Positions 10,345-63,900 of a stretch of DNA of 64,000 nt are shown in pieces. The stretch lies in IMG/VR virus record IMGVR_UViG_3300024308_000188, positions 150,527 through 214,526 of that record; one strand, given 5' to 3'. The notes below the pieces were generated by a model, which was given only the letters and a program-made list of their open reading frames with translations, did not search any database and was not told where the DNA came from. How positions within the stretch are numbered: position 1 is the first letter of the stretch; each line of letters begins with the position of its first letter. The translations under genes and the position numbers were made by a program.

Positions 10345-10356
10345 GAGGATCGTGAA

Positions 10357-10746: not shown

Positions 10747-10755
10747 GGAAATTGC

Positions 10756-11181: not shown

Positions 11182-11279
11182 ACTGATCCAAGTGTGTCAA
11201 AAATCAGGGGTTTATTTCAATACCTTATTTTGGTATAATCCGGCCTGTTCGCTTACACAAAAAGTTGGTAAACTAAACA

Positions 11280-18954: not shown

Positions 18955-19764
18955 ATGTTTAGTTCACCAGAAAATAGTCCTTATGGAGTGTTGCCAGAAC
19001 ATACAATACCTTTGGTTGAAATAGAAGAATCTTTGTGTGAACCTTATATTCATGGTCAAACAGTAAAAGTCAAAAAGCTTCCAAGGTTTCAACCAGTATG
19101 TCACATTATAATTCGCCCACCTGAAGCCAAACAAGTTGTTGTAGAAGAAAGTTTCGAGCAAGATTTTATTCAACAAAAATACACAACTGTAGATCTCAGC
19201 AAACTTTCTCGCTACAAAAGAACAGCCGAACAAAAAGAAGTCATGCAGGAAGTTGACATCGAAGTTGATATTTCTCCACCTGACAATCTGATACGTTTAA
19301 AAACTGCCCATATAAAAAACTTTCCTAAAATACTTCAAACTAAATCAGGTTTGATAAAAGATGTTTTTATAAAAGAATATCTTCCTCAAATTTTAGGTAT
19401 TGATGAAGCTTCTGCTTATGTAGAGGCATTCGCAAAAGACGGACTCGGCTTATCTGAATTTGAGATAAGCGTTGATATGATTCCATATATTCATAACGCG
19501 ATCAAGACTGATTTCGTTAGCCTTATCCTAAAACAATTGACTAACCTAAGTGAAGAAACCCGACAAGCTTATATTATAGGTTATGTAACTGATGCTCTTG
19601 CATCTGCGCGTTATCTAGCTAAAAATAATCTTGCGGCTCAACAGCACAGACGTTACCAAGAAAGACTGGACAATCCTGCCGGATATGTTGCTGGCGTTGG
19701 AATGAAAAAATCTAAGGTAATTCGTGATGGTAAAGCAGATAAAGAAAAAGAAGCCAATAGGTAA
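18955..19764 (+). CDS. Hypothetical protein upstream of terminase (positional candidate for small terminase)
   Basis: ATG 18955 preferred because GTG 18925 lies inside the hairpin; function is positional inference only. Confidence 0.7.
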   Translation: MFSSPENSPYGVLPEHTIPLVEIEESLCEPYIHGQTVKVKKLPRFQPVCHIIIRPPEAKQVVVEESFEQDFIQQKYTTVDLSKLSRYKRTAEQKEVMQEVDIEVDISPPDNLIRLKTAHIKNFPKILQTKSGLIKDVFIKEYLPQILGIDEASAYVEAFAKDGLGLSEFEISVDMIPYIHNAIKTDFVSLILKQLTNLSEETRQAYIIGYVTDALASARYLAKNNLAAQQHRRYQERLDNPAGYVAGVGMKKSKVIRDGKADKEKEANR

Positions 19765-22675
19765 AGCCAAAAAACCTAGTGCAATTAAACCATTAGATGA
19801 TTTATTCAATTTGTTGGGTGAAGATGACGATGAAAGCGTCACAATAGTACATGACGACGATGACGACGATGATGGCCATCATTTTAAGCATGATTTAGAA
19901 GATGGCCATGAAGTCTTAGATCTCGAACAACTTATATATGATGAACTGGATAATGCTAGGCCGATCTCTAAAGATTTGCGTATAGACGACAGTTCTATGC
20001 CGATAGCAAAAAACTTCTTACAGTTTGCTAATGATGAAAGTTTTCTTAGTTCCACGCCTTATCTCGAACAGGCCATAATAGGTATCAAACTTTTTGCTGA
20101 GTATTGTCCAAGACCTGAATGTTCTGATTTAAAATGGTTTTCTGATGATGGACATTCGGCAGATGAACCATTAGCAACACTTTCCAGAAAAGTGTCTCTT
20201 TTACATCATGGTGTTTGTCCAAAGTGTGGCGCACGTAAATCCGAACTTATTGCAAGTGGTGAACTAAATTTCTATAACGAACTTGTAGTTGTTGCTGGAC
20301 AGCGTTGTGTTACTGGCGATACTCATATTTTCACTGGAAAAGGTATTGAAAGAATTGGAGATCTTGTTCCGCGCAATGCTAAACAAGGTTACAATGATTT
20401 TAAATATCCTGTATTCAACGGTGAAAAGCTTGAGACAACAAAAGAATTTTATATAACGAAAGCCGAACACGTTTACACACTACAGCTGGATAATGGATCT
20501 ACTTTAAGTGGAACTCTTGACCATCCTGTTCGTGTTGAAAAGTTTGGTTATCGTGCTTTGCACCAAATAAAAGCTGGTGAGCAAGTTGTTGTACAAACCG
20601 GACAAAATTGTTGGGGAAATTTAAACTGCCCTTATACAGTTGATGAATTACGCTCTATAGGATCTGATATTACAAATCGACTAGACTTGTTGGTTGATAC
20701 AGTAGCTGGTAAAGGCTTACATCCAGATCTTTTAAAATACAGTATGAAAAATTGTCGAGAATTTCTACGTGGAGTATTCGACAACAACACAACGCAATAT
20801 CCTGTTGCTTACCACCAATTAGTAAAAGATGTTTATGCCTTGCTGCTAAACATTGGCATTCTGCCTACAATTCAAAATACCTCAGAAACAATCTCCATTT
20901 CTATCTCAAACGAAAACCGAAATATATTATTTGATGATCACAGATCCGTCAAAAGAAATCGGCATCTTTTATCCGTTGTTAGCTGCGGAGTTACAGATAG
21001 AACTGAAGTCATGTACGATGTTACAATGCCTATCACACAACATTTTATTACCAATGGCATTGATTCACATAACAGCGGCAAGTCTGCGGTTGTTACCATG
21101 ATAAGTGCTTATATAGTGCATTTGTTTTTGATGTGTGGTAAGCCCACTGAACTTTTCAATATTCGTAATAACGAAATATTGCATGGAACTTTCCTTGCGC
21201 TTACACTTGGACAAGCAACACAAAACTTATGGGAACCTTTTCTCGGTTACATAAATAATAGTCCTTGGTTTAAAGCTTATCACTTAATGCTTCGTCGTTA
21301 TGAAAAGAAATACGGAGAAGTTCTACTAAAGCTAAAAGATACCTTTATTGATTATCGTCATAGAAACCTTAAACTTTATCCGGCAACTCCAGACAAACGT
21401 GTACTTCGTGGTCGTACTCGTATACTCGGAGCCCTGGATGAACTTGGGTGGTTTGATTCTAATCGTGATAGTAAAAAAGTTAAGGATAACGCGCACGAAG
21501 TTTATAAAGCAATGTCAAACAGTTTGGCTACTGCCAGACAAAGTGAAAAGCGTTTAGTCGAACAAGGCTTTGATCAATTCATGTTAACCGGATATATGTT
21601 GAACGTAAGTTCTCCAAATAATATCCGTGACAAAATCATGGAACTTTATAAACAAAGTTTGGGCAGTCGTAAGATGCTTGGCCTTCATCGTCCAACATGG
21701 AAAATGAATCCACATATTCCATTTGATGGTGAATTGATACGTGAAGAATATCGTAAAGATCCTATTGGAGCTGCACGAGACTTTGGAGCCGAGCCAAGTT
21801 TATCAAGTAATCCGTTTATGAGTAATCACAGATTACTTGAAGAGACTGTTAGAACTAGCGGTAAAAATTGGGTTAAATATGCGCTCAAAACTATTCGTAT
21901 CAGTCGAGACGAAAAGCACAGAACCGTTGAGTTACTTAACGTCAAACAAAATGGCTCTAGGAGTGTTATGGCTATTGATGCTGGATTCTCTAACAACTGT
22001 TTTGCCATAGTCTGTGGATCTTTGCATGATGGTATTCCTCACATGGATTGCCTTTTAGAAATAAATGCTCTTCCTGGTATTCCAATAAGTTTCACTTCTG
22101 TTTTTGCAGATGCTGTACTTCCACTTATTGAACAGCGCAATTGCAGTATTCTTTTGGCAGACCGTTGGAATAGTATCAAGTTATTGCAAGATGCTCAAGC
22201 CACCTATGATAGTTTAAAAGTGTCAGGTCAATATAGCTTACGCTACAACGATATGTACGAAGTTAAAACAGCTATTGAAATGGGTCAATTCAAAATACCA
22301 AACATTGAAGATCCTAGCATTAAAAATATCCTTGCTAGTAACCTCGATGATTATCCAGCGTGTTTTGAAGGTAGACCTGTACATCATTTGCTGCTGCAAC
22401 TTGCAACCGTTGTTGATGTTGGTAAGAAATCTGTTGAAAAAGGAAATGGATTCACCGATGATCTTTGGAGAGCAGCCGCGCTTTGTTATTTTGGTTTAAC
22501 TAATCCAGATTATCAAGAGCATTTGGTTGGTGAGGTTGAAAGTAAAAAAGTTCAACCACCGTTAGCCCTGTTGAAGAAACTCACGGGCGGAATGAATGCG
22601 CTTACTGTTACAACCGGAAACAAAACGTATTCGGGTTCGACAAAATTCATCGGTGTAAAACGAACAGGAAAATAA
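19724..22675 (+). CDS. terL: Terminase large subunit, intein-containing
   Basis: Walker A GQR|SGKS split by intein; Walker B LGALDE; nuclease AIDAG, LADRW, DDLWRA; portal-like gene downstream. Confidence 0.9.
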   Translation: MMVKQIKKKKPIGKAKKPSAIKPLDDLFNLLGEDDDESVTIVHDDDDDDDGHHFKHDLEDGHEVLDLEQLIYDELDNARPISKDLRIDDSSMPIAKNFLQFANDESFLSSTPYLEQAIIGIKLFAEYCPRPECSDLKWFSDDGHSADEPLATLSRKVSLLHHGVCPKCGARKSELIASGELNFYNELVVVAGQRCVTGDTHIFTGKGIERIGDLVPRNAKQGYNDFKYPVFNGEKLETTKEFYITKAEHVYTLQLDNGSTLSGTLDHPVRVEKFGYRALHQIKAGEQVVVQTGQNCWGNLNCPYTVDELRSIGSDITNRLDLLVDTVAGKGLHPDLLKYSMKNCREFLRGVFDNNTTQYPVAYHQLVKDVYALLLNIGILPTIQNTSETISISISNENRNILFDDHRSVKRNRHLLSVVSCGVTDRTEVMYDVTMPITQHFITNGIDSHNSGKSAVVTMISAYIVHLFLMCGKPTELFNIRNNEILHGTFLALTLGQATQNLWEPFLGYINNSPWFKAYHLMLRRYEKKYGEVLLKLKDTFIDYRHRNLKLYPATPDKRVLRGRTRILGALDELGWFDSNRDSKKVKDNAHEVYKAMSNSLATARQSEKRLVEQGFDQFMLTGYMLNVSSPNNIRDKIMELYKQSLGSRKMLGLHRPTWKMNPHIPFDGELIREEYRKDPIGAARDFGAEPSLSSNPFMSNHRLLEETVRTSGKNWVKYALKTIRISRDEKHRTVELLNVKQNGSRSVMAIDAGFSNNCFAIVCGSLHDGIPHMDCLLEINALPGIPISFTSVFADAVLPLIEQRNCSILLADRWNSIKLLQDAQATYDSLKVSGQYSLRYNDMYEVKTAIEMGQFKIPNIEDPSIKNILASNLDDYPACFEGRPVHHLLLQLATVVDVGKKSVEKGNGFTDDLWRAAALCYFGLTNPDYQEHLVGEVESKKVQPPLALLKKLTGGMNALTVTTGNKTYSGSTKFIGVKRTGK
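20306..21073 (+). mobile_element. Intein (256 aa) with degenerate LAGLIDADG remnant
   Basis: Starts CVTGDTHI, block B TLDHP, ends FITNGIDSHN followed by Ser; remnant EFLRGVFDNN..LVKDVYALLLNIGI. Confidence 0.9.
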
Positions 22676-23740: not shown

Positions 23741-25675
23741 ATGTTCAGTTTTAAGAAAACAATTCCTTCCACTTCTCGAAGTCGAGATCAAGAAGGGTTA
23801 GGTACGTCATCTAAAGATCGTGTTAGTGTTCGCAAAGCTGCTGAGGCAGAACAAAAGAAAACACGATCCGAACAACAAGGCTTCAGATCTGAAAGTAACG
23901 CTTCAGCTGGCGCACGTATGAGTAGTTTAGACGTAAACTTAGATACCTCTTTATTGTTAGAAGGTATGGACAGTGATTTAAAAGATCAGCAACTGTTCAG
24001 AGTTTATCGTGATATGTACTGGCACGATCCTGTTTGTGGATCTTGTGCAGATTTATACTCAACACTTCCTTTTTCTGAATTTAGTTTGGCCGGAGCTTCG
24101 GACAAATATTTAGATCAATACAGAGAAGTAGTTGAACTCTTGAATCTGCGTACAGCAATGCCTCGTATTAGTATTGACCATCAAGTTACTGGCGCATTCA
24201 CTGCAACTATTTTGTACAACAGCCAGAAAAAGCAATTCATTGATTTGATGTGTCACAAATATGAAAACCTTACCGTACACTCTTTGCCATTATTTGGTCA
24301 AGATCCAATAATGTACTTGCAGCTTGATGCTGATATGAAACGTACTTTGGGTTTGCCTTCAAAACGCATAGAGCAAATACGTCAAAGTCTTGGTATAGAA
24401 TTTTTTAACAAACTACTCAACGATCAAATTGAATTAGATCCAGTAGGTACTTTGTATGTTCCACGTAAAACTTTCTCTTATGGTGAAGGTGTTAGTTACT
24501 TTAAACGAGTGCTTCCACTTTGGTTGATTGAGAAAAATTTATATCGCGGAACACTGATTGAAAGTGGACGTAGACAACGAGCCATACTTCACTTAATGTT
24601 AGGTGAAGAAGGTTGGGAACCTACACCACAAGATTACGAACAAGCAACTGATTTATTTCTTGATGCTGATGCTGATCCTATAGGTGCTGTTGTCGCAACA
24701 CGTTTAGGTATTAGCGTTAGCGAGTTAAGACCAGGTGGTGACTTTTGGAAAGTTACTGACATTTGGGATCAAACAACTCCAGCAAAAATGAGAGCGCTTG
24801 GAATAAGTGAAGCTTTCTTGAGTGGTGACGCAAGTTATCAAACAATGGAAGGCTCAATGACTGTTTTCACTGAAACAATGAGAGCATATCGTGATATGCA
24901 AACTCGTTGCATTTTCTACGATAAAGTATTTCCGTTAGTTTCTATGATGCACGGTAATACAATTCGTAAAGGTAAGATTGTTAAACGTGAAGGCTTGATG
25001 TCTGGAACTACAGAAGAACGCTTACGTTTAATGCAAGATGGTTCAAAACTTTTAATTCCAAATGTACATTGGGCAAAAAGTTTAAAGCCTGAGCAAGATC
25101 AATCTTATATGGAAATTCTTGATCGTATGACTGCTGCTGGAATTCCAGTTCCAATACGAATGATGGCTGCTGCTGGTGGATTTAACTTGGATCAGCTGTT
25201 ATTAAATCAAGATGAAGATTTTGCTATTCAACGTCAACTTCTTGATTACAAAAAACGTGTTGCCGATATGACCGCTAAATATGCTGCTGCCGAAGGCGGT
25301 GGCGCTGAAGGCGGTGGCGGAGGAATGGGATCTTTCAGTTCTTCAAGTTCTGATCGTTATTTCAATCCAGATCGTTATCTCGATAAAGTAACTGCACAGC
25401 CACGGGGATTCAGTAATATTCTTGGAGGTGCTTCGCAAAATCTTTTACGTCACGATTTTGGTGAAGGAAGCGAGTTATATACTCACGATCATAGCGGTAA
25501 GAAAAAGCATGTATTTAATCAGACTGCGAAAAACAAGATGATCAATGCCAAAATTACAAAAGCCTTAGTTGCTATGAGTAAGAGTGGTAATGCACCATTG
25601 TTAACGCACGAAACAACGACAAATTTAAAGCCAACGCAAAGAGAAATGCAACGGCTTCTTGGAGTAGTTAAATGA
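23741..25675 (+). CDS. Portal protein (probable)
   Basis: Position after terL; 644 aa; YRDMYWHDPVCGSCAD, RALGISEAFLSG portal-like pattern. Confidence 0.7.
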   Translation: MFSFKKTIPSTSRSRDQEGLGTSSKDRVSVRKAAEAEQKKTRSEQQGFRSESNASAGARMSSLDVNLDTSLLLEGMDSDLKDQQLFRVYRDMYWHDPVCGSCADLYSTLPFSEFSLAGASDKYLDQYREVVELLNLRTAMPRISIDHQVTGAFTATILYNSQKKQFIDLMCHKYENLTVHSLPLFGQDPIMYLQLDADMKRTLGLPSKRIEQIRQSLGIEFFNKLLNDQIELDPVGTLYVPRKTFSYGEGVSYFKRVLPLWLIEKNLYRGTLIESGRRQRAILHLMLGEEGWEPTPQDYEQATDLFLDADADPIGAVVATRLGISVSELRPGGDFWKVTDIWDQTTPAKMRALGISEAFLSGDASYQTMEGSMTVFTETMRAYRDMQTRCIFYDKVFPLVSMMHGNTIRKGKIVKREGLMSGTTEERLRLMQDGSKLLIPNVHWAKSLKPEQDQSYMEILDRMTAAGIPVPIRMMAAAGGFNLDQLLLNQDEDFAIQRQLLDYKKRVADMTAKYAAAEGGGAEGGGGGMGSFSSSSSDRYFNPDRYLDKVTAQPRGFSNILGGASQNLLRHDFGEGSELYTHDHSGKKKHVFNQTAKNKMINAKITKALVAMSKSGNAPLLTHETTTNLKPTQREMQRLLGVVK

Positions 25676-49611: not shown

Positions 49612-50232
49612 TTATAAACAGTAAACTGTTCCAGTTGAAGAAGTTGTAAACGTCAGCACACTTTGATTCACTGAAGGACTGGATAATTCGTAATTCAAAA
49701 TTTCCATTCCGTAAGCGTTCAGAACGCGAATTGCTGGATCATAACCTAAGTTGTGATTTACCGTAACAGTTGTTTGACTGGTGAACGGTTGCTCATAACG
49801 AATATCTGGTTTAGCTAAACCATCAATGTTACCAACCATAATTGTTGCAACACCAGAAACTGCTACGTTAAATGTAATCTGAACTGTGTCAGCATCTAAT
49901 GTAATAATTTCTTGCGCTGTAGCAACTTCACCATCCGGCCAAGGCTGCACAATTAAACGTGTACTGTTCATATTGTGTTGCACTGTCCAAACTGTCGATG
50001 GAGTTTGTTGTTCGTGCGTATAAGTATTTTTCTCTTGCAGAAGTTGCACCCAACCTAAAGAAGTTGTTTGACCATCAACAATAGTTACACCCATAAGCAG
50101 ACGACCTTGGACACGCACTATTCGACCTTCACCTGCAAATTCGACACCATCGTCGTCAGCACTAAAGGCCAAATTTTTTACGGCGTTTCCCATGAAGTTT
50201 GTTCTACCTAAGACTTTCATAGGTTTCCTCAT
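49612..50232 (-). CDS. Protein with two HNLG-type modules
   Basis: YTHEQQTPSTVWTVQHNMN; YEQPFTSQTTVTVNHNLG. Confidence 0.75.
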   Translation of the reverse strand: MRKPMKVLGRTNFMGNAVKNLAFSADDDGVEFAGEGRIVRVQGRLLMGVTIVDGQTTSLGWVQLLQEKNTYTHEQQTPSTVWTVQHNMNSTRLIVQPWPDGEVATAQEIITLDADTVQITFNVAVSGVATIMVGNIDGLAKPDIRYEQPFTSQTTVTVNHNLGYDPAIRVLNAYGMEILNYELSSPSVNQSVLTFTTSSTGTVYCL

Positions 50233-50295: not shown

Positions 50296-51990
50296 TTAAA
50301 CTAAAGGTGCAGCACCGACAGCGATAACACGGATTTTACTTGCAGGAATTACGTCAACAGTAAAGCTGTTTGCATCAACGAAAGTAATTTCGTCAACACC
50401 AACTACGTTGTCGAATTCATCTACAACAGTTACACCAACATATTTCTGGCCCATACCGTGTGTTACAGTGTGGGTAGAAGCAGCTGTTGCAGTACCATCA
50501 TAAACGAAGTAACCAGCAGAAATGCGCGTGTTCACATCGTTGATTGCGCCACTTAATTCTGTATCTAAGTTATCCAGATCCAGTTTACGAGCAGGGTTTG
50601 CATCAACAGTCGGAGCTTGAACTGTAACAGCACCAGTGAAATCCGCACCATCTAAACGTGCATACAGACCATCTAAGAAAGTTTCGTCAACACTTACACC
50701 AGAACCATCAACAGTGATACCATCACCAGCAGTAACAGAAATCGCAACACCGTTACCACCAGCTAAACCGTTACCAACAACTGCACCTAACATTGCAGCA
50801 GTAACGCCTTGCGAAGCGATTTGTACGCCACCATCGACACCGAAACTTAAACCACCAGCAGACTGTAATAAAACAGCTAAAGCAGCAGAAGTATCAGTAG
50901 AAGCAGTTGAACCATCAACAGTTAAGAATAAACCGCTGTTAGCGCGAACATCAATACCAACTTCATCAGTAGGTAACTGAGAAATACCAGCACCCATGTT
51001 TACGTTGAAAGTATTTCCGCTACGAACTAAACCGATACCCGCAACGATTGAATCGACACCTTCAAAACGTGCCCAAGCGCCGTTGTAACGATAGAATGAA
51101 CCATCATCTAAGTTGGTAGCAAAAGTACCAGCGGCATTTGCACCAGCTGTAGAAATATCGTAGGCAACTACGAAAGATCCATCCATATATTCAACGATGT
51201 CGTTGTCACCAACACCAGCGATAGTTCCGAAACCTGCATTCAGATTCGCGACATCAGTAACGATATAGCGAGCACCTTCAACAGTCTGTGGAACTAATGT
51301 GTTATCAACTTGAATTGCTAACACATCATCTTGCCAGTTCAGATTTGCAATGGCAGTTTCTAAATCGATTTTACGAGCGACATCAGTTGCATTCAACGGC
51401 GCACCAACACCACTAATGCGATTGTCGTTCATTGCTAACTGACCAGTCATGCTGTCGCCAGCACGATTTACTGGAGTGTAGCCTAAATCAGCTTGTTTTC
51501 CATCCAATTGAGTTTGGATTGGGCCAGTAACTCCACCGACATAACCTAATTCAGTAGTCGTTACAGAAGAAACTCCAACTTTACCAAAAGCATCTGCAAC
51601 CAAAACACGATCAGATGTTAAATCGGCGGTAGTGATTGAAGTGGCAGCACCAGTGATAGTGTTTTGTTTGGTAGCTAATTGAGTATCTAAGTGACCTTTA
51701 CTGATTGCAGTTAAATCAGTAGCAGCACTTTGATCATCGCTGTCTAACAGCAAAGCACCTAACATTGCCAGTGAACCGTCACGACGTAAATAATCGTCCA
51801 GTGAACCACCTTCGGCAAATTGTTTTACTTCGCCATCTAAATAAAAGCGAATAACATTGTCAGTTGTGTTTGTCCATACACGACCTTCCCACAAACCTGC
51901 GCCAGCTGGATCAGCTACCAGTTTCTCAGGTGTGAAATTTTTGATTTGGCCTTGGCCCATAAAAGTTAAAGAACCATATTGTTTAGACAT
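50296..51990 (-). CDS. Fibre-like structural protein (564 aa)
   Basis: GDSMTGQL and xAxxKxxLD fibre-type motifs; Gly/Val-rich repeats; C-terminal HNLG-like module (THGMG); GAGGT SD. Confidence 0.75.
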   Translation of the reverse strand: MSKQYGSLTFMGQGQIKNFTPEKLVADPAGAGLWEGRVWTNTTDNVIRFYLDGEVKQFAEGGSLDDYLRRDGSLAMLGALLLDSDDQSAATDLTAISKGHLDTQLATKQNTITGAATSITTADLTSDRVLVADAFGKVGVSSVTTTELGYVGGVTGPIQTQLDGKQADLGYTPVNRAGDSMTGQLAMNDNRISGVGAPLNATDVARKIDLETAIANLNWQDDVLAIQVDNTLVPQTVEGARYIVTDVANLNAGFGTIAGVGDNDIVEYMDGSFVVAYDISTAGANAAGTFATNLDDGSFYRYNGAWARFEGVDSIVAGIGLVRSGNTFNVNMGAGISQLPTDEVGIDVRANSGLFLTVDGSTASTDTSAALAVLLQSAGGLSFGVDGGVQIASQGVTAAMLGAVVGNGLAGGNGVAISVTAGDGITVDGSGVSVDETFLDGLYARLDGADFTGAVTVQAPTVDANPARKLDLDNLDTELSGAINDVNTRISAGYFVYDGTATAASTHTVTHGMGQKYVGVTVVDEFDNVVGVDEITFVDANSFTVDVIPASKIRVIAVGAAPLV

Positions 51991-54519: not shown

Positions 54520-55434
54520 TTATTCCTCTGGAACTACTTCTAACCCTGCTTCCAACAACACAACTATTCCTGTTGCTGGTATCGTATGATCAATTAAAAC
54601 AAAATTGTCATTTACTATAACAACTTGTTCTGCTCCAGCCAATTCCAATTTTATTCCATCAGGTGTAGTAATATGAACCCAATGTTGTACAATTAAGAAT
54701 TGAGTACCTAGATTGTGATTTATAATCCAAGTAGGCTCTGCTTCTGCTTGCTCATGTACATAAGTACGTGGAACAAGATTTGGATCTATTTGGCCACCAC
54801 CAGTTGTCTCTAAAGCTGTAATTCTTTGAGCTAACTGAGCGTTAGTTGTTTCTACTGCACCTATTCTATTGAACAACTGCATTAGAATAGTGTAAAAGCC
54901 TTGAGTCTGGCTATTAAGGCTATCTGTCATTTTTTGCAGAGGAATAAATTCTTCTGGTTGTAGTGGAACAGATCTCCAATTTGCTCTGGCTCTTAAAACG
55001 CCAAGCATTGTATCGCCATTTATATTAACTGCTCCAATTTGAGTTGGAGTAGCAGCATGAGCATTCCCTACAGAATATCTATGATTTTCTAGTGCAGGGC
55101 GAATAAAACCGTCAACAGCATCATACACAGGAAATGTATTTATTACGTTTGCGTATACCGTTGGATATTCGTAAGTATTTTGGTAAGGAAAGTTTGCAGT
55201 CTTTGAAGTTCTTCTCAGAATCTTCTGATAATCTGCACTGTTAGAATCTGAAACTATCCACATAAAATTTAGTGGAAGTTCTGGCCCAGTGGGTTCAACA
55301 GCACTGACATAAATCAAAGCTGTTTCGTTTTGTGTAGATCCTACAGCTAAAACTATTTTATTGGATGCCGTCAGTCCCAAAGCTACAGCTTTACTCAAAC
55401 ACTCACTAACTAGCCCTATTAATAGTGTGTCCAT
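54520..55434 (-). CDS. Probable virion protein with coiled coil and C-terminal HNLG module
   Basis: GDTMLG; YVHEQAEAEPTWIINHNLG. Confidence 0.75.
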   Translation of the reverse strand: MDTLLIGLVSECLSKAVALGLTASNKIVLAVGSTQNETALIYVSAVEPTGPELPLNFMWIVSDSNSADYQKILRRTSKTANFPYQNTYEYPTVYANVINTFPVYDAVDGFIRPALENHRYSVGNAHAATPTQIGAVNINGDTMLGVLRARANWRSVPLQPEEFIPLQKMTDSLNSQTQGFYTILMQLFNRIGAVETTNAQLAQRITALETTGGGQIDPNLVPRTYVHEQAEAEPTWIINHNLGTQFLIVQHWVHITTPDGIKLELAGAEQVVIVNDNFVLIDHTIPATGIVVLLEAGLEVVPEE

Positions 55435-55952: not shown

Positions 55953-56726
55953 TTAATCGCCCATTACAAACCACCAGAACTGCCAAGGCTCAAGCTGTGC
56001 AGGTGGAGTTCCTTTAAGAGTTATTGTTACACCACCAATTTCTAAATCATCGTAGAAATATTCACCTATTTCATAATTCAGAGCTTGGTAGCTACTTGGA
56101 TTCTTAAAGAACAATACAATACTTACAACACCGTTTATTAAATTTCTCGGAAACAGTAAAGTTATTGTTCTGTCTTGCAGAGCATTTTCGAAGAAGCCAC
56201 TTTGAATTGTTCCACCGCTTCTTTGTAAATAAATAGATGCTCCACGACTTGTCTTTACATATTCTGGTTCAAGGCCGTCAATACCTGCATCACCTTTGTC
56301 ACCTTTGTCACCTTTGTCACCTTTGGGGCCGATTTCTCCTTGCGGCCCTCGTGGGCCTTCTGGCCCAATTGGGCCTCTTAAGCCACGATCACCTTTTACT
56401 CCAGGACAACCTTGTTCTCCAGGACGACCATCACGACCATTTCTTCCTGCTACTCCAGAAATACCTTGTTTACCTTCTGGCCCACGTTGTCCAGTTGGTA
56501 AACTTCTTATTGTTGGAAAGCCAGAAATTAAAACTATCGAATTATCAGCATTGACTATTGTGACTGTTCCACTATCCGCATCATACGTTCCTTGTATAAC
56601 AGCAGGTTGAACAGTTGCCGACGGATCTTGTGCGGCTAATATTCCCGGCTGAACAACCGTAACATTTTGTCCTGCTAAACTTGTTGATCCAGCGTTGATC
56701 ATTGCTAAAGGTAGTCTAGTTATCAT
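55953..56726 (-). CDS. Collagen-like fibre protein
   Basis: About 24 contiguous Gly-X-Y triplets (GQRGPEGKQG...GDKGDKGDKGDAGIDG) plus C-terminal beta domain. Confidence 0.9.
   Translation of the reverse strand: MITRLPLAMINAGSTSLAGQNVTVVQPGILAAQDPSATVQPAVIQGTYDADSGTVTIVNADNSIVLISGFPTIRSLPTGQRGPEGKQGISGVAGRNGRDGRPGEQGCPGVKGDRGLRGPIGPEGPRGPQGEIGPKGDKGDKGDKGDAGIDGLEPEYVKTSRGASIYLQRSGGTIQSGFFENALQDRTITLLFPRNLINGVVSIVLFFKNPSSYQALNYEIGEYFYDDLEIGGVTITLKGTPPAQLEPWQFWWFVMGD
56291..56325. repeat. 9-bp tandem repeat (CACCTTTGT)x~4 encoding GDK repeats
   Basis: Directly visible. Confidence 0.85.
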
Positions 56727-56944: not shown

Positions 56945-56962
56945 TTTAAGCTCCCAGTACAC

Positions 56963-56998
56963 AAACTTCTTCTGAATACAATGAAACAGAAGAAGTTT
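56963..56998 (-). terminator. 12-bp-stem hairpin after the large fibre gene
   Basis: AAACTTCTTCTG / CAGAAGAAGTTT. Confidence 0.6.
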
Positions 56999-57041
56999 TG
57001 TCTATAACTTTAAATTAGCAGGTTTTGCCATTTTAAAAACA

Positions 57042-60000
57042 CTACTGTTGTATTGTAGTATCTTTGTTGTGTACAAGAACTCCACCAGCAAAATAAGTAT
57101 CTAACGATTCAACATCAAGACGTACAGTTTTAATGTTTCCGTATATCAATTGATTCGACAGAACTTTTATTTGACGACCGTTTGAATCTAAAACAGTATC
57201 ACCTGCTTTAAGATAACGAGCGTAATCAAATACCCAATCATTTCTATCAGAAAACTTAACTAAGAATGGATGTTCCGCAGTGACCCTTATAGGATCTATT
57301 TTGCCTTCTATCCAAATCTTATGATGTAGATTAGTTTCGTGATAAGAAACTGATGTTACTATGGCAGTAGATTCTTTTATTTGCAGATCATAAGTTGACC
57401 AAGTTAAATAATCAACAGGATTTTCAGCATTTGCATCAGTTAATCCTTCTATGGAAAAAGTTTTAACTGTTTCTCCAATAACAATATCTTCGATTTCTTT
57501 TTCAAAACCGTCAGACATAGTTATCAAAGTTCCGTATGCAAAACAATCTGCACTTCCGCCACCTACACTTGTTCCACCAATTACAGGATCGCAAGGGAAT
57601 TGTATTGGAACGTAACCAACTGTATCTGCCGCCGGACTAACATAACTTGTTACTGTTTGTGTGCAAATCACATTATCATTTTGATCTAAAAGATCTATGC
57701 TGTATGGAAGTGCTGGAGCGCGAAACACTGGCGCACCGTTACTATTACAGTAATGCCAATCCATCATGTTGAAACCTATTATATCCGTCATTTGAGATAA
57801 ACGAATTAATAAGTACGCATCATTTGTGAATGGGCCATAGTAATCCTTGTGTGAACACTGTATTCCATCTTGATAGCCATTTATCGCCTGTTTTGGCTTA
57901 TAGCTATTTAGATATTGGACAGGTTGGCCTTCTGTATATCCATGCTCAAAAGTACAATTTACGTAATTGTCTTGTATGACATTACCGAAATCATAAATAG
58001 ATCTATCTGATTTTATAAAATCAATATAACCTATTGCAATTGCTCCTGCCCCAGGTGCTGGATCTAAATTTCTGAATTTTATTCCAGCAATTGTCACGGC
58101 TGGTGGAGGTGGTGCTTCTGCTGGAACAGGACAATCTAAATTGTAATTCCATGCAGTTCCGTTTGGCCCAGTCATTCGGATCATTATTGTTGAAGGTTTA
58201 TTTGGCGGCCCTTCATAGTAAAATGAAAGAGTACCAGAACCACTTACTTCTGTTGGCAAATCTTTATTACCATTAGGTAGATTGTAATAGCGACCAGATC
58301 CATCATACGGATTACTTAAATCTTTACTTGTGGCCGCAACACGTACACCATCATAAAAGATTTCCATCATATCTGGAACACCAAACATATCAAAACCAAC
58401 TGTCACTTGGCCTGATTCAGATCCCATATTGTGAACTGTTTCTGTAACACCAGTACCACCAGATCCTGTCGTAACACCGCAAGGTTGAGCGTCATCATCT
58501 TGAAGTGTGACACGACCAACATTTTTTACTATTTGACCTCGACTATTGTTAGAGATCATTATTTCAAAATATTCGTCGTTTTCAATTGTAGTGTCCCCAA
58601 CAATAGTAACTTCAATTATTTTGTGTTGTTCACCTACACCAAAAACTAAAGTTCCTCTACCACTTATATAATCAGGTTCACTATCAATAGCATCAACGTA
58701 AGATTCAGAGTCACCTGCGTCAATGGCTCCACTCAAGCCAGCCCACAATGGATGATTACCTAAAGTAGATTTTGCGTTTTCTACTGTAAGTACCATAGAG
58801 CTTCGATCAATATTTCCTTTTAAGCCTATTCCAAAAGCATCAATTAAAACTTCGTTCACACCTTTAAAGTAACCAAATCCATTTATATCTTCAACGCCAT
58901 GATCTGATATGAATGCTGCACCTATTCCACTTAAATGGCTATCAACTAAAGCATTGATAAACTCTGGTGTGTTAACTTGAGATCCTGATTCAAAACTTCC
59001 AACATAAATAATGCAATCGAATTGATCGAAATATGCTTTAGTGGCCGGAACCTGAGAAGTGTAACCAGTAACCAAAGTTCTTCCAGATGCAATTGCAGCC
59101 GCATTAAACATATTAAAGAAGTCTGCATCATGACTTCCAGCTACATTGTAAGGTGAATCCAATTTGTCACCTAACAACAAAACTTGACCGCCAGTTTTAG
59201 ATTTAGATAACCAGTTTATTATGTTTATTGTAAATAAGTAAGAAGTTTGGTATTTTGCTACAGTATCTTTTGCAGCAAAACTCATGTTATACCATTTTGG
59301 AAAACAGCCATCTATATAAGTTCTGACTTTACTGTCTAAACTTTCTATGACGGTTATAAATGGATTACCTAAATCATCTTTAGCAAGTGTTTTAACACTA
59401 AGATCGCCTTTTGCCGTACCGTCACGAGTTTGCCAATCGACTGTTAATGCTTCGGCTGTTGCAGGTTCAGATAATGAAACTGTAACTTGTATTACATGAT
59501 TAACGTCTTGCTCAAGTACAGTAATATCTTCAATGCTTATGTCTGGTTGGTTAGCCACAACAATACAAGGTAATTCAAATTCGATAATTGCTGTATCGCT
59601 ATCTTGTACACCAGCTGAAGCATAATCCATATCATATACTGTAACAGCTACATTGATAGGGAACATTATTCCATCGTCAGTTGGTTCCAACATTTTTACA
59701 AAGCGAATTTTTGCAATTCGCCCTTTAGCCTCGGTTCCAACTAATTCAACAGAACCATTTCCAATATCGCCGCCCCATTCGTAACGATAGTTTCGTAATT
59801 GCCAATCATCAGGCTTAACAAAACGAACTTCAATACTCGCTGTTTGTTCCCACAAAACTCCTGCTGGTACGCAAGCGCGACAATCAATTACAGGATCGAC
59901 TGGCGGTGGAGGTTCTGGCGGTGGAACATCCAATGTAGGTAATTTCTCCCACGCTGCATAAATTCTGCCATCACTTGAACGAATATGTTTTGTTCCGCGA

Positions 60001-60953
60001 TTTTGCCAAATAGGTTTCAACAACTCTATATAATGATCATAACCCGCATCATACAATAAACCGCGTTCACGCCAATTTATTTGAGTTGTATTCTGAATGT
60101 TTGAATCTGTGAAATAATAAGAAGTAGCCATTTCTGTGCTACCTTTAGGATCTTGTGATACTACCATTATTTCAGTATCATCAGGCCAAGCATAAGGTTT
60201 AGCATCACGCCAATTTCCACCAGCTTGTATGCCATTAGGAAGTGCAAACGTGTGTTGCTTCCAACTATTAAATTCAGTTGTTGCTTTGGTATCAGTTCTA
60301 AATTTTCTGCGAAGTATATACGCTATTAAACCATCACCTTTGTCGAATCTACGAATATGTCTGCCAGTTGGACTAGAAAACCGACCACGATACATCATTA
60401 CACCTGACGCACCTTCAATCGGTTTTAAATAACCACCGCCATTTATATCACTCGCATTCATTGCTGCCGGACAAAAGAAGTGAGCGCATATAGACCACTT
60501 AAGATCTGGATAGCGACCAGGAGGCTCTGTTGCGTGAACAAAGATAACGTATTCATAATCATCAGGCCAGTCAATATTTAATTGTACAACTCCAGGGCCT
60601 GAATAATAAACTTCCCAATTTTCTGAAGTAAAGTCCGATACGCCAACTGTAATCGGGCGCTCTAAAACTTTTAAAATTGGACAAGCATCACCTTTACGTG
60701 ATTCGCTTTTAATCTGCATTGTTTGACGATCAAGAACAATCCATGCGTCAACCGTTACAGCTAAAAATCCACGATCAATAGCTCGAAGAGAAGCCGCATG
60801 TGTATTTATATAAACAACACCTACTTCATCATCTGCGTTTCTTTCAATCGTGTAGATAATGTATTCATGGTCAAACTTCCACGAAATTCCAGGAACAGTT
60901 GTCGCATTAGATCCTAAATTTTCGTAAACAGTTGTGAATGGAGTTCCTGCCAT
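57042..60953 (-). CDS. Large modular fibre/adhesin-like protein (1303 aa): PKD-like region, split Calx-beta, beta-sandwich module, C-terminal Hint domain
   Basis: ISIEDITVLE..WQTRDGTAKG [insert] PDYISGRGTLVFGVGE..ENDEYF..VTLQDDD; Hint CFAYGT..TAEHPF..VLVHN. Confidence 0.85.
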   Translation of the reverse strand: MAGTPFTTVYENLGSNATTVPGISWKFDHEYIIYTIERNADDEVGVVYINTHAASLRAIDRGFLAVTVDAWIVLDRQTMQIKSESRKGDACPILKVLERPITVGVSDFTSENWEVYYSGPGVVQLNIDWPDDYEYVIFVHATEPPGRYPDLKWSICAHFFCPAAMNASDINGGGYLKPIEGASGVMMYRGRFSSPTGRHIRRFDKGDGLIAYILRRKFRTDTKATTEFNSWKQHTFALPNGIQAGGNWRDAKPYAWPDDTEIMVVSQDPKGSTEMATSYYFTDSNIQNTTQINWRERGLLYDAGYDHYIELLKPIWQNRGTKHIRSSDGRIYAAWEKLPTLDVPPPEPPPPVDPVIDCRACVPAGVLWEQTASIEVRFVKPDDWQLRNYRYEWGGDIGNGSVELVGTEAKGRIAKIRFVKMLEPTDDGIMFPINVAVTVYDMDYASAGVQDSDTAIIEFELPCIVVANQPDISIEDITVLEQDVNHVIQVTVSLSEPATAEALTVDWQTRDGTAKGDLSVKTLAKDDLGNPFITVIESLDSKVRTYIDGCFPKWYNMSFAAKDTVAKYQTSYLFTINIINWLSKSKTGGQVLLLGDKLDSPYNVAGSHDADFFNMFNAAAIASGRTLVTGYTSQVPATKAYFDQFDCIIYVGSFESGSQVNTPEFINALVDSHLSGIGAAFISDHGVEDINGFGYFKGVNEVLIDAFGIGLKGNIDRSSMVLTVENAKSTLGNHPLWAGLSGAIDAGDSESYVDAIDSEPDYISGRGTLVFGVGEQHKIIEVTIVGDTTIENDEYFEIMISNNSRGQIVKNVGRVTLQDDDAQPCGVTTGSGGTGVTETVHNMGSESGQVTVGFDMFGVPDMMEIFYDGVRVAATSKDLSNPYDGSGRYYNLPNGNKDLPTEVSGSGTLSFYYEGPPNKPSTIMIRMTGPNGTAWNYNLDCPVPAEAPPPPAVTIAGIKFRNLDPAPGAGAIAIGYIDFIKSDRSIYDFGNVIQDNYVNCTFEHGYTEGQPVQYLNSYKPKQAINGYQDGIQCSHKDYYGPFTNDAYLLIRLSQMTDIIGFNMMDWHYCNSNGAPVFRAPALPYSIDLLDQNDNVICTQTVTSYVSPAADTVGYVPIQFPCDPVIGGTSVGGGSADCFAYGTLITMSDGFEKEIEDIVIGETVKTFSIEGLTDANAENPVDYLTWSTYDLQIKESTAIVTSVSYHETNLHHKIWIEGKIDPIRVTAEHPFLVKFSDRNDWVFDYARYLKAGDTVLDSNGRQIKVLSNQLIYGNIKTVRLDVESLDTYFAGGVLVHNKDTTIQQ
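57066..57545 (-). other. C-terminal Hint (intein-like/BIL-type) domain, 160 aa
   Basis: Cys1, block B TAEHP, terminal HN followed by Lys and only 7 residues. Confidence 0.85.
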
Positions 60954-60995: not shown

Positions 60996-63900
60996 TTACG
61001 GAATGTTTCCACCTGCAAAAATTGGATCACTAACAATATTGATTGTAACCAAGTTACTTTTCATTTCAACACCATTACTTGCTTTGATCCATAATATTGC
61101 CTCTACAACAAGCGAGTAACCTGATCCGCTATGTTCTTCGTTCGATTGATTCACAGCAAACGATGTTATTCTGTTCATTACATCGTAAGTAGTTGCTATC
61201 GACGGAACAGTAAGCTTTCTATTTCCATCATTAAATTTAACTGAGTATTCCCACTTATAAACATAAGTAAGTGCAGGATCATACGGATAATCACCAGCAG
61301 TATAGTATTTATTAAGTTGAGCTTGCGTACCCATACCACCATTTGCTTCAACAACAGCAATTTTTCCAGGCTGTTCTATGCCACCTGGATTTGTTTGGGT
61401 AGGAAAGCCGGAATAATCTATTGCAAACGCAACTGCACTTCCGTAAACTCTGACACCAGAGTTGTCCCAAGTATTTTTACTGTGTGAAGTAAAATAAGAT
61501 GGAGCAAAGTTCAAATCACCTACGGGTGTAGGTGAAGTGTTGGAGTTAGCAAAAGTTGCAATACCTTGAGCATCTACAATTGTACCGCTGTCAGTTCCAG
61601 TTAAGTTCAAATAGAAATTTTTTCCAATCGGACTTGCTTTTGGATCTAAAGTTGTTACCTTAACTTGAGCTGAAGTTGCCCCAGTTGGTATAGTAACTAT
61701 TTCAGATTTCGCAACGTAATCAGGATCAACTGTTGTCGGTGCTGGAATATAAAGAACATCCAATACAGTAAAATCTGAATCAGCTTTTGCTTCAGAAATA
61801 CCTGTCAACAATGGAGTATCAGGATATTGAGCAAGATGACGACCAAGCGTAACATCAGCATTAGTCGGATTTTTTGTCAGCTGCTCGTTCCAGTAAAACT
61901 TTACACCAACAAAACAATTCATTACATCACGAATTAAAATGTTTTGGGCAAGACGTTGGTTTGTCGCTCTAAAATAACAATGAAGCACTCGATTTTGTTT
62001 AACTTGATCTGCAATGGCAATACCAACAGGACTTTTATATCCTTGAAGTACCCGCGCCATATAATGCACACCAGCCGCACTGAATTGACCAACTTCACCC
62101 CAACGTCTACTATTCGCAATCGTAATAATATCATATGGTGTAAAATTTTGAGTTGTATAATCATCACGCACAACATGAACATTCATGCCATAAATGTTTA
62201 TCATGCTTTGAATAAAGTTGGAACATATTTCAGAAAAATCACCAGCAGGATCTGCACTATCCGTTAAGATAATCCAACTTTTGCCATTTAAGTTCCCTAA
62301 ACGATGTTTCCAAGCATTCACAACTAATTTTGCATCAGGCGAAAGATTAGCGAATGAACTTGTTTCCAAGTTTTGCCAGTAGTTGGTGTTTCTTCCCATT
62401 ATATGAGAAGGATCATTTGTAGCCGCAGCATTTTTATGTTCAGGGTTTGCCAAATTTCCCCAACCATTATCAAATACAACACTAGCATTCGGCCAATTCT
62501 GTACACCAAAACGCAATGTCTTGCTGTCGAAATTTGCGGTTTCTGTAGGTGAATCATTATCCTGAAAAATACCATAAATGTCCGGTAATCCAGCATAATC
62601 AGATCCTGCACCGCCAGAACTTTTCGCAGTTCCGTCTTGCGTTGAAACACTTACATGCACATCATTTGGAACCGGTAAACTTGATGTGACTGTGAATGTA
62701 GCAAAATCACTTTTCACACACTGAACATCATTAACAGTGATCTCAAATTCATCGTTACAAACTGGAATTGTTTTATCATCCAACTCAATATCAAGTAATT
62801 CTACTGGACATCCTACAAAGTAAGTCCAAGAACTTCCGATTGGCGCATCAATACGTACAGCAATGCGTTTACGAGTATCACCATGTTCAGCCGCTTTAAT
62901 AAAAAATTGAGTAAATGTAGTTCTCTTACCTTCAGTGTACGCAACAAGTTTTCCGTCAATATCAAAAACAGTTACAGTATAAGTAAAATCTCCGTAACCT
63001 GTTGCTTTAATACTGACTACTCCGTTTTCAACACCATTATCCATGTCATAGTTATCTTCGGTGCTACCGTGACCCATGCTACTTAAACCAGCAACAGGAG
63101 TTTCACAGTCCCAAGGATTTTCTCTGTATCCAGGAGTGTTTTGACAGAATAATGTGTAGTACCAACTCATAATATCTTCGCCGTATTGACGAACATCAGC
63201 ACTCACACGAATCATTAAATCTGGAACGGGAATACTAAAACGATTTGGTTCCCATAAAAATTGAATCATTCCCAACAAACTTTTTGGATCCATTGTGCTA
63301 CCGATACGCAAGCCTCCGTGATAAACTTCAAATTTATCAAGGTTCATCCAACTTGTGTAATCAATAACCATTAAGGCAAGTTCGTTTGGATCTGCATTTT
63401 CACCTACATAGTGGTGAAATTCGTAAAACCATTTGCCATCATTTGTTTTGTAGTCACGAGGAAAAACTGTTGCGTGGCACGGTGCAGGAAATAAAGGAGT
63501 TCCACTATATTCATCAGTTCTTATTAAAACCTGATGCAGTGGATCTTCTAAATCTAAATCATAAACACTGAGCATTTGTTTTGGCCCAGTTACCATGTAT
63601 GTCCAACGTGTACTTTCTTGACCACGAACACGAATCATTACACGACTTTCACCTTCGCCAGCAAGTGCATCAAAAAAGAATTCAATTTTGTAACGATCTT
63701 TAATGCGACCACACGTTGTTGCAATACGTTGACCTAAATAATAAACGTCAACACTAATACCTACATCGTCGTATGAAGCAAATATTACTTCGTACCATCC
63801 AGCAACTTGACCAAGATCATAAATTGTTTCAGTGATTTGAGCGCCACCACTAAAAGTAGTTGCCCACAAATAGTTTGGGTTCGCATAATTGCCACGACCT

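What the first reader, a model, noticed from the sequence alone, without database searches (positions are those of the whole stretch)
57042..57545. Fibre protein ending in a non-splicing Hint domain
Cys1, block B TAEHP and terminal HN are present, but the +1 residue is Lys and only 7 aa follow, so it cannot be a normal intein. Established: BIL and Hedgehog-type Hint domains self-cleave at their N-terminus and can ligate the upstream protein to a nucleophile. Inference: it is an auto-releasing folding chaperone, like S74 domains of tailspikes, or it covalently attaches the fibre C-terminus to another protein or small molecule.
Basis: partly seen in the sequence, partly recalled or inferred. Interest (0 to 1): 0.62.

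Follow-up and report, generated by a model that had tools for sequence, protein, structure and literature searches.

The report
Self-removing Hint cap with lysine tail
A large tail-module protein of an uncultured jumbo phage ends in an intein-like (Hint/BIL) domain followed by a seven-residue tail, and in about 100 related proteins that short tail almost always holds exactly one lysine, which suggests the domain cuts itself out and passes the protein's end onto that lysine.

Summary
The last 167 codons (Cys1137 to the end) of a 1303-aa ORF (57042-60953, minus strand) encode a Hint domain (residues 1137-1296). It has Cys1, block B T-A-E-H-P and a terminal His-Asn. A 7-aa tail starting with Lys follows, and then a stop.

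The AlphaFold model is confident (pLDDT 92.8). Its best structural matches are bacterial-intein-like (BIL) domains: Tetrahymena BIL2 first, then Clostridium thermocellum BIL. Classical inteins and Hedgehog score lower.

The architecture is common. Gly-rich linker, Hint, short tail and stop recur on phage virion or adhesin-like proteins, including cultured Erwinia and Dickeya jumbo phages, and on cellular proteins. The catalytic residues are near-invariant.

New here: of 108 distinct tails of 1-27 aa, 105 contain Lys and 99 contain exactly one. Arg is not enriched.

Tetrahymena BIL2 is reported to splice by forming an isopeptide bond to a Lys. My best reading is therefore a type-A BIL cap that excises itself, with the tail Lys as acyl acceptor. 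"Non-splicing" is probably wrong.

Complete orthologues without the cap exist, so it is not needed to fold the conserved body. No experiment or publication on it was found. New variant of a known kind; interest about 0.65.

The parts
57042..60953 (-). Whole gene: 1303-aa multidomain virion/adhesin-like protein ending in the Hint cap
   Evidence: PHROG 11065 and 38766 'virion structural protein'. Full-length homologues at 37-88% identity in syntenic jumbo-phage loci.
58695..59486 (-). Residues 490-753, region matching PHROG 11065 (virion structural protein)
   Evidence: E 3.7e-23
58494..58676 (-). Calx-beta domain (residues 760-820)
   Evidence: E 7e-10, above the Pfam cut-off
58119..58487 (-). 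Beta-sandwich (residues 823-945) of the PPC / collagen-binding / GOLD-like kind. Orthologues without a cap end here.
   Evidence: AlphaFold pLDDT about 85-90 for this part. VIA-align Z 9.7-8.1 to the Tk-SP C-terminal domain, p24 GOLD and ColG/ColH collagen-binding domains. P0008 and P0006 end after it.
57579..58118 (-). Residues 946-1125, extra pre-Hint domain of unresolved fold; would be the mature tip
   Evidence: No Pfam hit. AlphaFold pLDDT <50. The only lead is discoidin/F5-8 type C in the protein atlas, score 0.83-0.86.
57546..57578 (-). Gly/Ser-rich linker (residues 1126-1136, G-G-T-S-V-G-G-G-S-A-D); Asp1136 is the -1 residue
   Evidence: Gly is the commonest residue at -1 to -5 in relatives.
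57066..57545 (-). Hint / type-A BIL domain, residues 1137-1296 (160 aa, no endonuclease insert)
57543..57545 (-). Cys1137 (Cys1), predicted thioester-forming nucleophile
   Evidence: Cys in 138 of 144 aligned domains.
57267..57281 (-). Block B Thr1225-Ala-Glu-His1228-Pro
   Evidence: Thr in 125/144 (Ser in 13 more), His in 138/144.
57066..57071 (-). His1295-Asn1296, C-terminal junction (Asn cyclisation)
   Evidence: His in 139/144, Asn in 143/144.
57045..57065 (-). Seven-residue tail KDTTIQQ; Lys1297 (57063-57065) is its only Lys and the proposed acyl acceptor
   Evidence: Tail pLDDT about 40, so flexible. One-Lys rule in 99 of 108 unique tails.
57042..57044 (-). TAG stop codon
56956..57003 (-). 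RNA hairpin (12-bp core stem, 12-nt loop) in the 79-nt spacer after the stop; possible 3' end or stabiliser. Not part of the protein feature.
   Evidence: z -2.9. Not called as an intrinsic terminator.

Best explanation
The C-terminal 160-residue domain is a type-A bacterial-intein-like (BIL) Hint domain. It acts as a single-turnover, self-removing cap on a virion adhesin or fibre-like protein.

Proposed steps:
1. Cys1137 attacks the Asp1136 carbonyl (N-S acyl shift, assisted by Thr1225/His1228). The 1136-residue body is then held as a thioester.
2. The epsilon-amine of the single tail lysine (Lys1297) attacks the thioester, giving an isopeptide-branched intermediate. This parallels what is reported for Tetrahymena BIL2.
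3. Asn1296 cyclises (assisted by His1295) and frees the Hint domain.

The product is the mature protein, with its C-terminal carboxyl amide-linked to the Lys of a 7-residue peptide, plus a free Hint domain of about 18 kDa.

Shown here: the fold, the residues, the architecture, their conservation and the one-lysine rule. Inferred: all of the chemistry, and that the lysine is the acceptor.

The biological purpose is not established. The cap is accessory. It may be a transient mask or assembly timer for a sticky tip, a C-terminal capping device, or a tolerated passenger that must excise cleanly.
For: 1. BIL-type Hint.
- Foldseek best hits are BIL2 6Y75 (E 1.4e-10, TM 0.83) and BIL 2LWY. Classical inteins and Hedgehog score lower.
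- The top PDB sequence hit is 2LWY.

2. Catalytic residues under selection. In 144 aligned domains of about 30-45% identity: Cys1 138, block-B Thr 125 (+13 Ser), His 138, penultimate His 139, terminal Asn 143. Near-invariance of Asn argues that the C-terminal junction reacts, which pure Hedgehog-type release would not need.

3. Recurrent architecture.
- 91 of 144 domains sit 1-40 residues from the protein's end, with a mode of 5-9, usually after a Gly-rich linker.
- Stops were verified in DNA for IMG/VR loci.
- Full-length homologues P0003, 4, 5, 7, 9 and 10 all end this way. So do the 1304-aa protein of phage NCTB (tail APVDQKH) and Erwinia phage Yoloswag gp103 (collagen-like, tail TDIVAQAEKT).

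4. One-lysine rule.
- 105 of 108 unique tails of 1-27 aa have Lys, and 99 have exactly one.
- Controls: pooled-residue shuffle of the first set gave 47+-2.8 against 76 of 77 observed. Same-length windows from the same proteins gave 26.5+-4.1.
- Arg is not enriched: 1.5% in tails against 2.4% elsewhere.
- Lys sits anywhere from +1 to +9, and a tail of 'K' alone followed by a stop occurs.
- Lys is kept even where +1 is Ser or Thr (P0005, P0007).
- The three Lys-less tails are last units of tandem Hint arrays whose upstream inter-Hint linker holds the Lys.

5. Precedent. [quoted passage not shown] Type-A BILs have His-Asn, lack a +1 nucleophile and can splice by amine attack on the thioester (PMC4031507).
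Against: - No experiment bears on this protein or any phage relative. No virion proteomics was found.
- Type-A BILs studied in vitro give mainly cleavage products.
- A nucleophile at positions +1 to +9 is geometrically loose, and the acidic tails could raise the Lys pKa.
- One cellular clade (Polyangiaceae/Nannocystis, 7 loci) ends His-Asn-Tyr-stop with no Lys. The Lys is therefore not obligatory for every member.
- An isopeptide-attached heptapeptide has no obvious use.
Confidence: 0.5

Rival explanations
1. Cleavage-only cap. The thioester at Cys1137 is simply hydrolysed, or resolved by a small thiol or amine. Asn1296 cyclisation independently clips off the tail. The Hint is released and nothing is ligated. 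The tail lysine then has another role, for example docking the tail in the acidic active site (Glu/Asp of blocks B and F), tuning Asn cyclisation, or acting as a recognition element.
For: Cleavage products dominate for type-A BILs in vitro (PMC4031507 and PMC7664689). The Polyangiaceae clade with a His-Asn-Tyr-stop ending shows the domain can exist without a tail Lys. Conserved acidic residues near the active site could bind a Lys: Glu151 and Asp154 of the domain numbering are >=90% conserved.
Against: Hydrolytic release needs neither the terminal Asn nor any tail, as in Hedgehog, yet Asn is present in 143/144 and a tail is always present. A docking or charge role would tolerate Arg, but Arg is depleted. 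A precise catalytic role is hard to reconcile with Lys at +1 to +9.
Confidence: 0.25
2. Trans-ligation device. The thioester-activated C-terminus is passed to an external nucleophile. Candidates are a Lys of another virion protein (covalent anchoring of the fibre) or an amine or hydroxyl on the host envelope. This is analogous to Hedgehog cholesterylation, BUBL ubiquitin-like conjugation or sortase anchoring. The tail Lys would be only a default or safety acceptor.
For: BIL2 is reported to conjugate its N-extein to different substrates in trans (PMC8616854). Cargo domains are all extracellular adhesion types: collagen-like, Ig, FN3, BACON, LCCL, Calx-beta.
Against: No candidate partner is identified. 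A built-in Lys a few residues from the active site would outcompete external amines. The cap is absent from complete orthologues in otherwise syntenic phages, so any covalent anchoring cannot be structurally essential.
Confidence: 0.12
3. Retained, non-reactive structural or binding domain. The Hint stays on the virion as the distal tip, and the catalytic-looking residues are relics.
For: None specific. Hint-fold domains without chemistry exist (general knowledge).
Against: Cys1, Thr/His of block B and the terminal His-Asn are all near-invariant across hundreds of relatives at about 30-40% identity. A flexible Gly-rich linker precedes the domain. Surface loops, not active-site residues, would be conserved in a binding tip.
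Confidence: 0.05

Closest known systems
Type-A bacterial intein-like (BIL) domains (e.g. Clostridium thermocellum BIL, PDB 2LWY)
   Same: Hint fold, Cys1, block B TxxH, C-terminal His-Asn, no +1 Cys/Ser/Thr and no homing endonuclease. Located in a variable part of a surface or secreted-type protein rather than in a conserved enzyme site. Best PDB sequence hit, and among the top structural hits.
   Different: Here the domain sits at the extreme C-terminus with only 7 residues after it, on a phage virion protein. The tail obeys a one-lysine rule that I did not find described.
Tetrahymena thermophila BUBL BIL2 (PDB 6Y75/6TMM)
   Same: Best structural match (E 1.4e-10, TM 0.83). Reported to resolve its thioester on a Lys epsilon-amine, giving an isopeptide bond. 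This is the chemistry proposed here.
   Different: BIL2 lies between two ubiquitin-like domains and its acceptor Lys is in a folded C-extein or other proteins. Identity is only 20%. The Zn-dependent His switch of BIL2 was not examined here.
Hedgehog C-terminal autoprocessing (Hog/Hint) domain
   Same: A C-terminal Hint that releases the upstream protein through a Cys thioester and attaches a nucleophile to the new C-terminus.
   Different: Hedgehog lacks the terminal His-Asn and has a sterol-recognition region. It is a weaker structural match (1AT0, E 6.5e-5).
Pretoxin HINT (PT-HINT, PF07591) of polymorphic toxins
   Same: Best Pfam model. An autoproteolytic Hint near the C-terminus of large filamentous or surface proteins.
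   Different: PT-HINT precedes a C-terminal toxin domain that it releases (PMC3482391). Here nothing but a 7-residue tail follows.
Peptidase S74 intramolecular chaperone domains of phage tailspikes and fibres
   Same: Functional analogy only: a C-terminal self-cleaving domain on phage fibre proteins that is absent from the mature virion.
   Different: Unrelated fold and chemistry (Ser-Lys dyad). No S74 match in Pfam. Orthologues without the Hint cap argue against an obligate folding role.
Classical class-1 mini-inteins
   Same: Same fold and the same four junction and assisting residues.
   Different: No +1 Cys/Ser/Thr, no functional C-extein, and not inserted in a conserved host-protein site.

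Membership tests
Hint (Hedgehog/intein) superfamily | Hint fold | tested here: met
   AlphaFold pLDDT 92.8. 55 PDB matches at E<=1e-3, all of the listed ones BILs, inteins or Hedgehog.
Hint (Hedgehog/intein) superfamily | N-terminal Cys/Ser nucleophile and block B Thr-x-x-His | tested here: met
   Cys1137; Thr1225 and His1228. Conserved in relatives.
Type-A BIL domain | C-terminal His-Asn like inteins | tested here: met
   His1295-Asn1296. His 139/144, Asn 143/144. Definition taken from PMC4031507.
Type-A BIL domain | No Cys/Ser/Thr at +1 | tested here: met
   +1 is Lys1297. In relatives +1 is mostly K, A, I, V; S or T occurs in a minority.
Type-A BIL domain | No homing endonuclease; sits in variable, non-essential regions of surface or secreted proteins | tested here: met
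   160-aa domain. Orthologues with and without it.
Type-A BIL domain | Autocatalytic N- and C-terminal cleavage, with or without splicing | not testable with these tools
   Needs expression and mass spectrometry.
BIL2-type lysine (isopeptide) splicing | Acceptor Lys downstream of the domain | tested here: met
   A single Lys in the tail; 105/108 tails have Lys and 99 have exactly one.
BIL2-type lysine (isopeptide) splicing | Isopeptide product actually formed | not testable with these tools
   Chemistry inferred by analogy with PMC8616854.
Classical intein | +1 Cys/Ser/Thr, and a C-extein that completes a functional host protein | tested here: not met
   +1 is Lys; only 7 residues follow.
Hedgehog Hog domain | Sterol-recognition region after the Hint; no terminal His-Asn | tested here: not met
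   His-Asn is present and only a 7-aa tail follows. Pfam Hint (PF01079) E 0.079.
PT-HINT polymorphic toxin module | Toxin domain C-terminal to the Hint | tested here: not met
   Stop codon 7 codons after Asn. The Pfam score is above the cut-off only for the isolated domain.
Peptidase S74 intramolecular chaperone | S74 fold with Ser-Lys dyad | tested here: not met
   No Pfam match. The fold is Hint.

The most novel reading that the evidence does not exclude
A large, previously unremarked clade of Hint domains performs natural lysine-directed protein splicing. It occurs on phage virion proteins and on proteins in genomes of candidate-phyla bacteria, Omnitrophota, Planctomycetota, Legionella, Bacteroidota MAGs and small archaea. 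Each cap carries its own single acceptor Lys. It excises itself while amide-linking the cargo's C-terminus to that Lys, or, when the tail is outcompeted, to a Lys on another protein. That would make it an enzyme-free, ATP-free conjugation and capping system for extracellular adhesins and phage fibres. The tandem Hint arrays with K/KG/KGG linkers would be serial versions of the same reaction.
Probability: 0.35. Interest if true: 0.8.

Novelty: new variant of a known kind. Interest (0 to 1): 0.65.

Why it matters
If the tail lysine is the acyl acceptor, lysine-directed isopeptide splicing would not be confined to one ciliate locus. It would be a widespread natural reaction, common in phage tail-fibre modules.

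That would add a third self-processing strategy for phage fibres, beside S74 chaperone domains and protease trimming. It would also explain why virion proteomics may miss the C-terminal 18 kDa of such proteins.

It would offer compact, cysteine-initiated, self-contained tags for C-terminal protein labelling or ligation to lysine.

It also matters for annotation. These genes are currently labelled 'intein domain protein', 'virion structural protein' or 'hypothetical'.

Tried and rejected
- Classical intein: rejected. No +1 nucleophile and no real C-extein.
- PT-HINT toxin module: rejected. Nothing follows the domain.
- Hedgehog-type domain: rejected. His-Asn is present and there is no sterol region.
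- S74 chaperone: no match.
- Obligate folding chaperone for the whole protein: weakened. Complete orthologues P0008 (931 aa) and P0006 (965 aa) lie in syntenic loci and lack any Hint. The 236-aa ORF after P0006 is unrelated.
- Lysine enrichment as a composition or gene-end artefact: rejected. Shuffles and same-protein windows give far fewer Lys-containing tails, there is no Arg enrichment, and the rule holds in the IMG/VR loci with DNA-verified stops. In cellular genomes 27 of 34 short tails follow it.
- Other Hint copies in this genome: none found with this query.
- Near-identical DNA in cultured phages: none.
- Literature: 9 of the 10 allowed full-text searches found no description of C-terminal Hint caps on phage virion proteins and no virion proteomics for relatives. 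Subscription-journal papers, e.g. on Erwinia phage Y3, are not in the library.
- Fold of residues 946-1125: the AlphaFold attempt failed (pLDDT <50). The discoidin lead from the protein atlas is weak.
- The search for related loci with the 54-sequence alignment failed for lack of a conserved stretch. It was repeated with a 12-sequence alignment.
- Not used, because they do not bear on protein processing: complex prediction and the read-mapping tools.
Full report
**The observation**

The window is the last 64 kb of a 214.5-kb IMG/VR virus record estimated to be 85% complete. It encodes a large terminase, a portal, topoisomerase II subunits and a DnaB-like helicase, so it is a jumbo tailed phage.

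On the minus strand, ORF 57042-60953 encodes 1303 residues. Its last 172 residues read as follows:
- a Gly/Ser linker ending Ser-Ala-Asp;
- Cys1137-Phe-Ala-Tyr-Gly-Thr;
- block B Thr-Ala-Glu-His-Pro (1225-1229);
- Val-His-Asn (1294-1296);
- Lys-Asp-Thr-Thr-Ile-Gln-Gln and a TAG stop.

The finding's coordinates run exactly from the Cys1 codon to the stop.

**Is it a real Hint domain?**

- Pfam gives PT-HINT at E 4e-7, above the curated cut-off for the isolated domain, plus Intein_splicing, Hom_end_hint, Hint_2, Vint and Hint.
- The best PDB sequence hit is the C. thermocellum bacterial intein-like domain 2LWY (E 5e-4).
- An AlphaFold model built on 54 relatives has mean pLDDT 92.8. Only the tail is disordered, at about 40.
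- Foldseek ranks Tetrahymena BIL2 (6Y75/6TMM, E 1.4e-10, TM 0.83) and 2LWY first. Class-1 mini-inteins follow at about 1e-6 and Hedgehog at about 6e-5.

It is therefore a BIL-type Hint of 160 residues without an endonuclease insert.

**The carrier protein and its neighbourhood**

The body matches PHROG 'virion structural protein' families. It contains a Calx-beta domain.

Residues 823-945 form a confident beta-sandwich of the PPC / collagen-binding / GOLD kind. Residues 946-1125 could not be folded. The only lead for them is a weak discoidin-like one.

The gene lies in a minus-strand block of virion genes. A collagen-like tail-fibre gene lies downstream at 55953-56726, separated by a 79-aa ORF. 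The 957-aa upstream gene shares PHROG 26008 with residues 830-877, which lie in that beta-sandwich.

A homologue's locus (P0007) has the same gene order. 'Fibre protein' is thus plausible, as a tail-module adhesin, but it is not demonstrated.

**How common is the architecture?**

phmmer of the domain against 1.84 billion representatives gives 1687 hits at E<=1e-3. In the top 150 proteins I located 144 full-length domains, with these residue counts:

| Position | Conserved in |
|---|---|
| Cys1 | 138 |
| Block-B Thr | 125 (+13 Ser) |
| Block-B His | 138 |
| Penultimate His | 139 |
| Terminal Asn | 143 |

Ninety-one of the 144 lie within 40 residues of the protein's end, with a mode of 5-9. They are typically preceded by a Gly-rich run.

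Six of the nine close full-length homologues (P0003-P0011) of the window protein end the same way, with tails of 6-12 residues.

Cultured phages carry it too. Examples are Erwinia phage Yoloswag gp103 (collagen-like body plus Hint), many Erwinia SNUABM phages, Alexandra, Y3, Dickeya AD1, and phage NCTB. NCTB's 1304-aa 'large intein domain protein' has the domain at its extreme C-terminus.

An independent scan of IMG/VR returned 80 loci in which I checked the stop codons in DNA. Some phages carry two capped proteins.

The same clade occurs in cellular genomes: candidate-phyla bacteria, Omnitrophota, Planctomycetota, Polyangiaceae, Legionella, Bacteroidota MAGs and small archaea.

**The new observation: one lysine in the tail**

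Among 77 unique tails of 3-27 residues in the first set, 76 contain Lys and 73 contain exactly one. Shuffling the pooled tail residues gives 47+-2.8.

Adding the IMG/VR set gives 108 unique tails of 1-27 residues. Of these, 105 have Lys and 99 have exactly one. Same-length windows drawn from the same proteins give 26.5+-4.1.

Further properties of the rule:
- Arg is not enriched (1.5% in tails against 2.4% elsewhere). The selection is for the amine, not for charge.
- Lys is at +1 or +2 in about a third and last or penultimate in about a third.
- A tail consisting only of 'K' before a verified stop occurs repeatedly.
- Lys persists when +1 is Ser or Thr (P0005, P0007).
- The three Lys-less tails are the last units of tandem Hint arrays, whose preceding inter-Hint linker carries the Lys.
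- A group that I first mis-scored as lacking His-Asn in fact ends Ala-His-Asn plus a 7-residue tail with one Lys.
- In cellular genomes, 27 of 34 short tails begin with Lys at +1 or +2. The 7 exceptions are a single Polyangiaceae/Nannocystis clade ending His-Asn-Tyr-stop.

**Mechanism**

Established knowledge covers the following (PMC4031507, PMC7664689):
- Hint domains form a thioester at Cys1 with help from block B.
- The terminal Asn cyclises to cut the C-terminal junction.
- Type-A BILs have His-Asn but no +1 nucleophile. They mostly cleave, but they can splice by amine attack on the thioester.

Two features are co-conserved here: a terminal Asn, which simple release does not need, and a single downstream Lys. 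This mirrors the co-conservation of Asn and +1 Cys/Ser/Thr in inteins.

I therefore infer a three-step route: thioester at Asp1136-Cys1137, aminolysis by Lys1297, then Asn1296 cyclisation. The products would be the mature body carrying an isopeptide-linked heptapeptide and a free Hint. I put this at about 0.5.

That the domain is an active self-processing BIL at all, I put at about 0.8.

Rivals are cleavage-only processing (0.25), transfer to an external nucleophile (0.12) and a retained inert domain (0.05).

**Purpose**

Complete, syntenic orthologues exist in three forms:
- without any cap (P0008 of 931 aa, P0006 of 965 aa);
- with the cap directly after the beta-sandwich (P0009, P0010, P0039);
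- with an extra domain plus the cap (the window protein, P0003-5, P0007).

The cap is therefore accessory and mobile among C-termini. This argues against an S74-like obligate chaperone for the body.

Three possibilities remain:
- a transient mask or timer for the distal domain;
- chemical capping of the C-terminus;
- a tolerated self-removing passenger.

The data do not discriminate among them.

**Comparison and novelty**

The domain meets every sequence- or structure-testable criterion of a type-A BIL. It fails the criteria for a classical intein, a Hedgehog Hog domain, a PT-HINT toxin module and S74.

Databases annotate relatives as 'intein domain protein' or 'Hint domain containing protein'.

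Nine full-text searches found no description of C-terminal Hint caps on phage virion proteins, of the lysine-tail rule, or of proteomics that would show processing. The library lacks many subscription papers, so prior mention cannot be excluded.

I rate it a new variant of a known kind, with interest 0.65.

**Limits**

- All of the chemistry is inferred.
- Only the best 150 of 1687 homologues could be inspected.
- The host is unknown.

Noticed in passing
P0019, P0021, P0044, P0046, P0052; L013, L034, L053, L057; L101, L131, L145, L158, L160, L163: Tandem arrays of 2 to at least 5 complete Hint domains joined by 1-5-residue linkers, such as His-Asn-K-Cys, -KG-, -KGG-, -KGA-, -IPPK-, -RC-. They occur in phage contigs and in Legionella, Sedimentisphaerales and Planctomycetia genomes. 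Each unit keeps Cys1 and His-Asn. What serial self-excising units achieve is unexplained.
   Followed up: partly
window 55953-56726 (-): A 257-aa collagen-like tail-fibre gene matches positions 21-148 of PHROG 38766, while the Hint of the 1303-aa protein matches positions 337-472 of the same family. In Erwinia phage Yoloswag the two halves are one protein (gp103). The cap has therefore moved between fibre genes.
   Followed up: partly
L164 4001-6796 (P0008); L165 2744-5641 (P0006): These are complete orthologues of the window protein in syntenic loci that end right after the PPC-like beta-sandwich, with no Hint cap. The cap is gained and lost among close relatives.
   Followed up: yes
L105, L108, L124, L130, L134, L146, L153 (Polyangiaceae / Nannocystis genomes): This is a cellular clade of C-terminal Hint caps ending His-Asn-Tyr-stop. 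Apart from the last units of tandem arrays, it is the only group without a tail lysine.
   Followed up: no
window 56956-57003 (-): A stable hairpin (12-bp core stem, 12-nt loop; z -2.9 against shuffles) lies in the 79-nt spacer between the stop of the Hint gene and the next ORF. There is no U-tract, and the terminator scan did not call it.
   Followed up: partly
window 54520-55434 (-) and 49612-50232 (-): Two ORFs hit PHROG 24148, labelled 'HNH endonuclease', but the 304-aa ORF (the only one of the two scanned against Pfam) has no Pfam match, and both sit among virion genes. They also share PHROGs 21918/30556 with the 564-aa virion protein at 50296-51990. The PHROG label may be a misnomer for a fibre-related module.
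   Followed up: no
window 60996-63869 (-): The 957-aa upstream gene matches PHROG 26008 (E 3e-71). Residues 830-877 of the Hint-bearing protein match the same family. The two neighbours share a repeated beta-sandwich module that is also repeated in the phage NCTB and Yoloswag gp98 proteins.
   Followed up: partly
window 19724-22675 (+), 23741-25675 (+), 8362-12923 (+): These ORFs encode a large terminase (983 aa), a portal and two topoisomerase II subunits. A search of the genome with the Hint domain found no second Hint, so the long terminase shows no intein related to this domain.
   Followed up: partly
L010 and L019 (IMG/VR contigs); phage NCTB L003 1-1205 and 2569-6483: Several phages encode two or three separate Hint-capped proteins in one tail module. 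NCTB also has a free-standing 153-aa Hint ORF directly after a capped gene.
   Followed up: no
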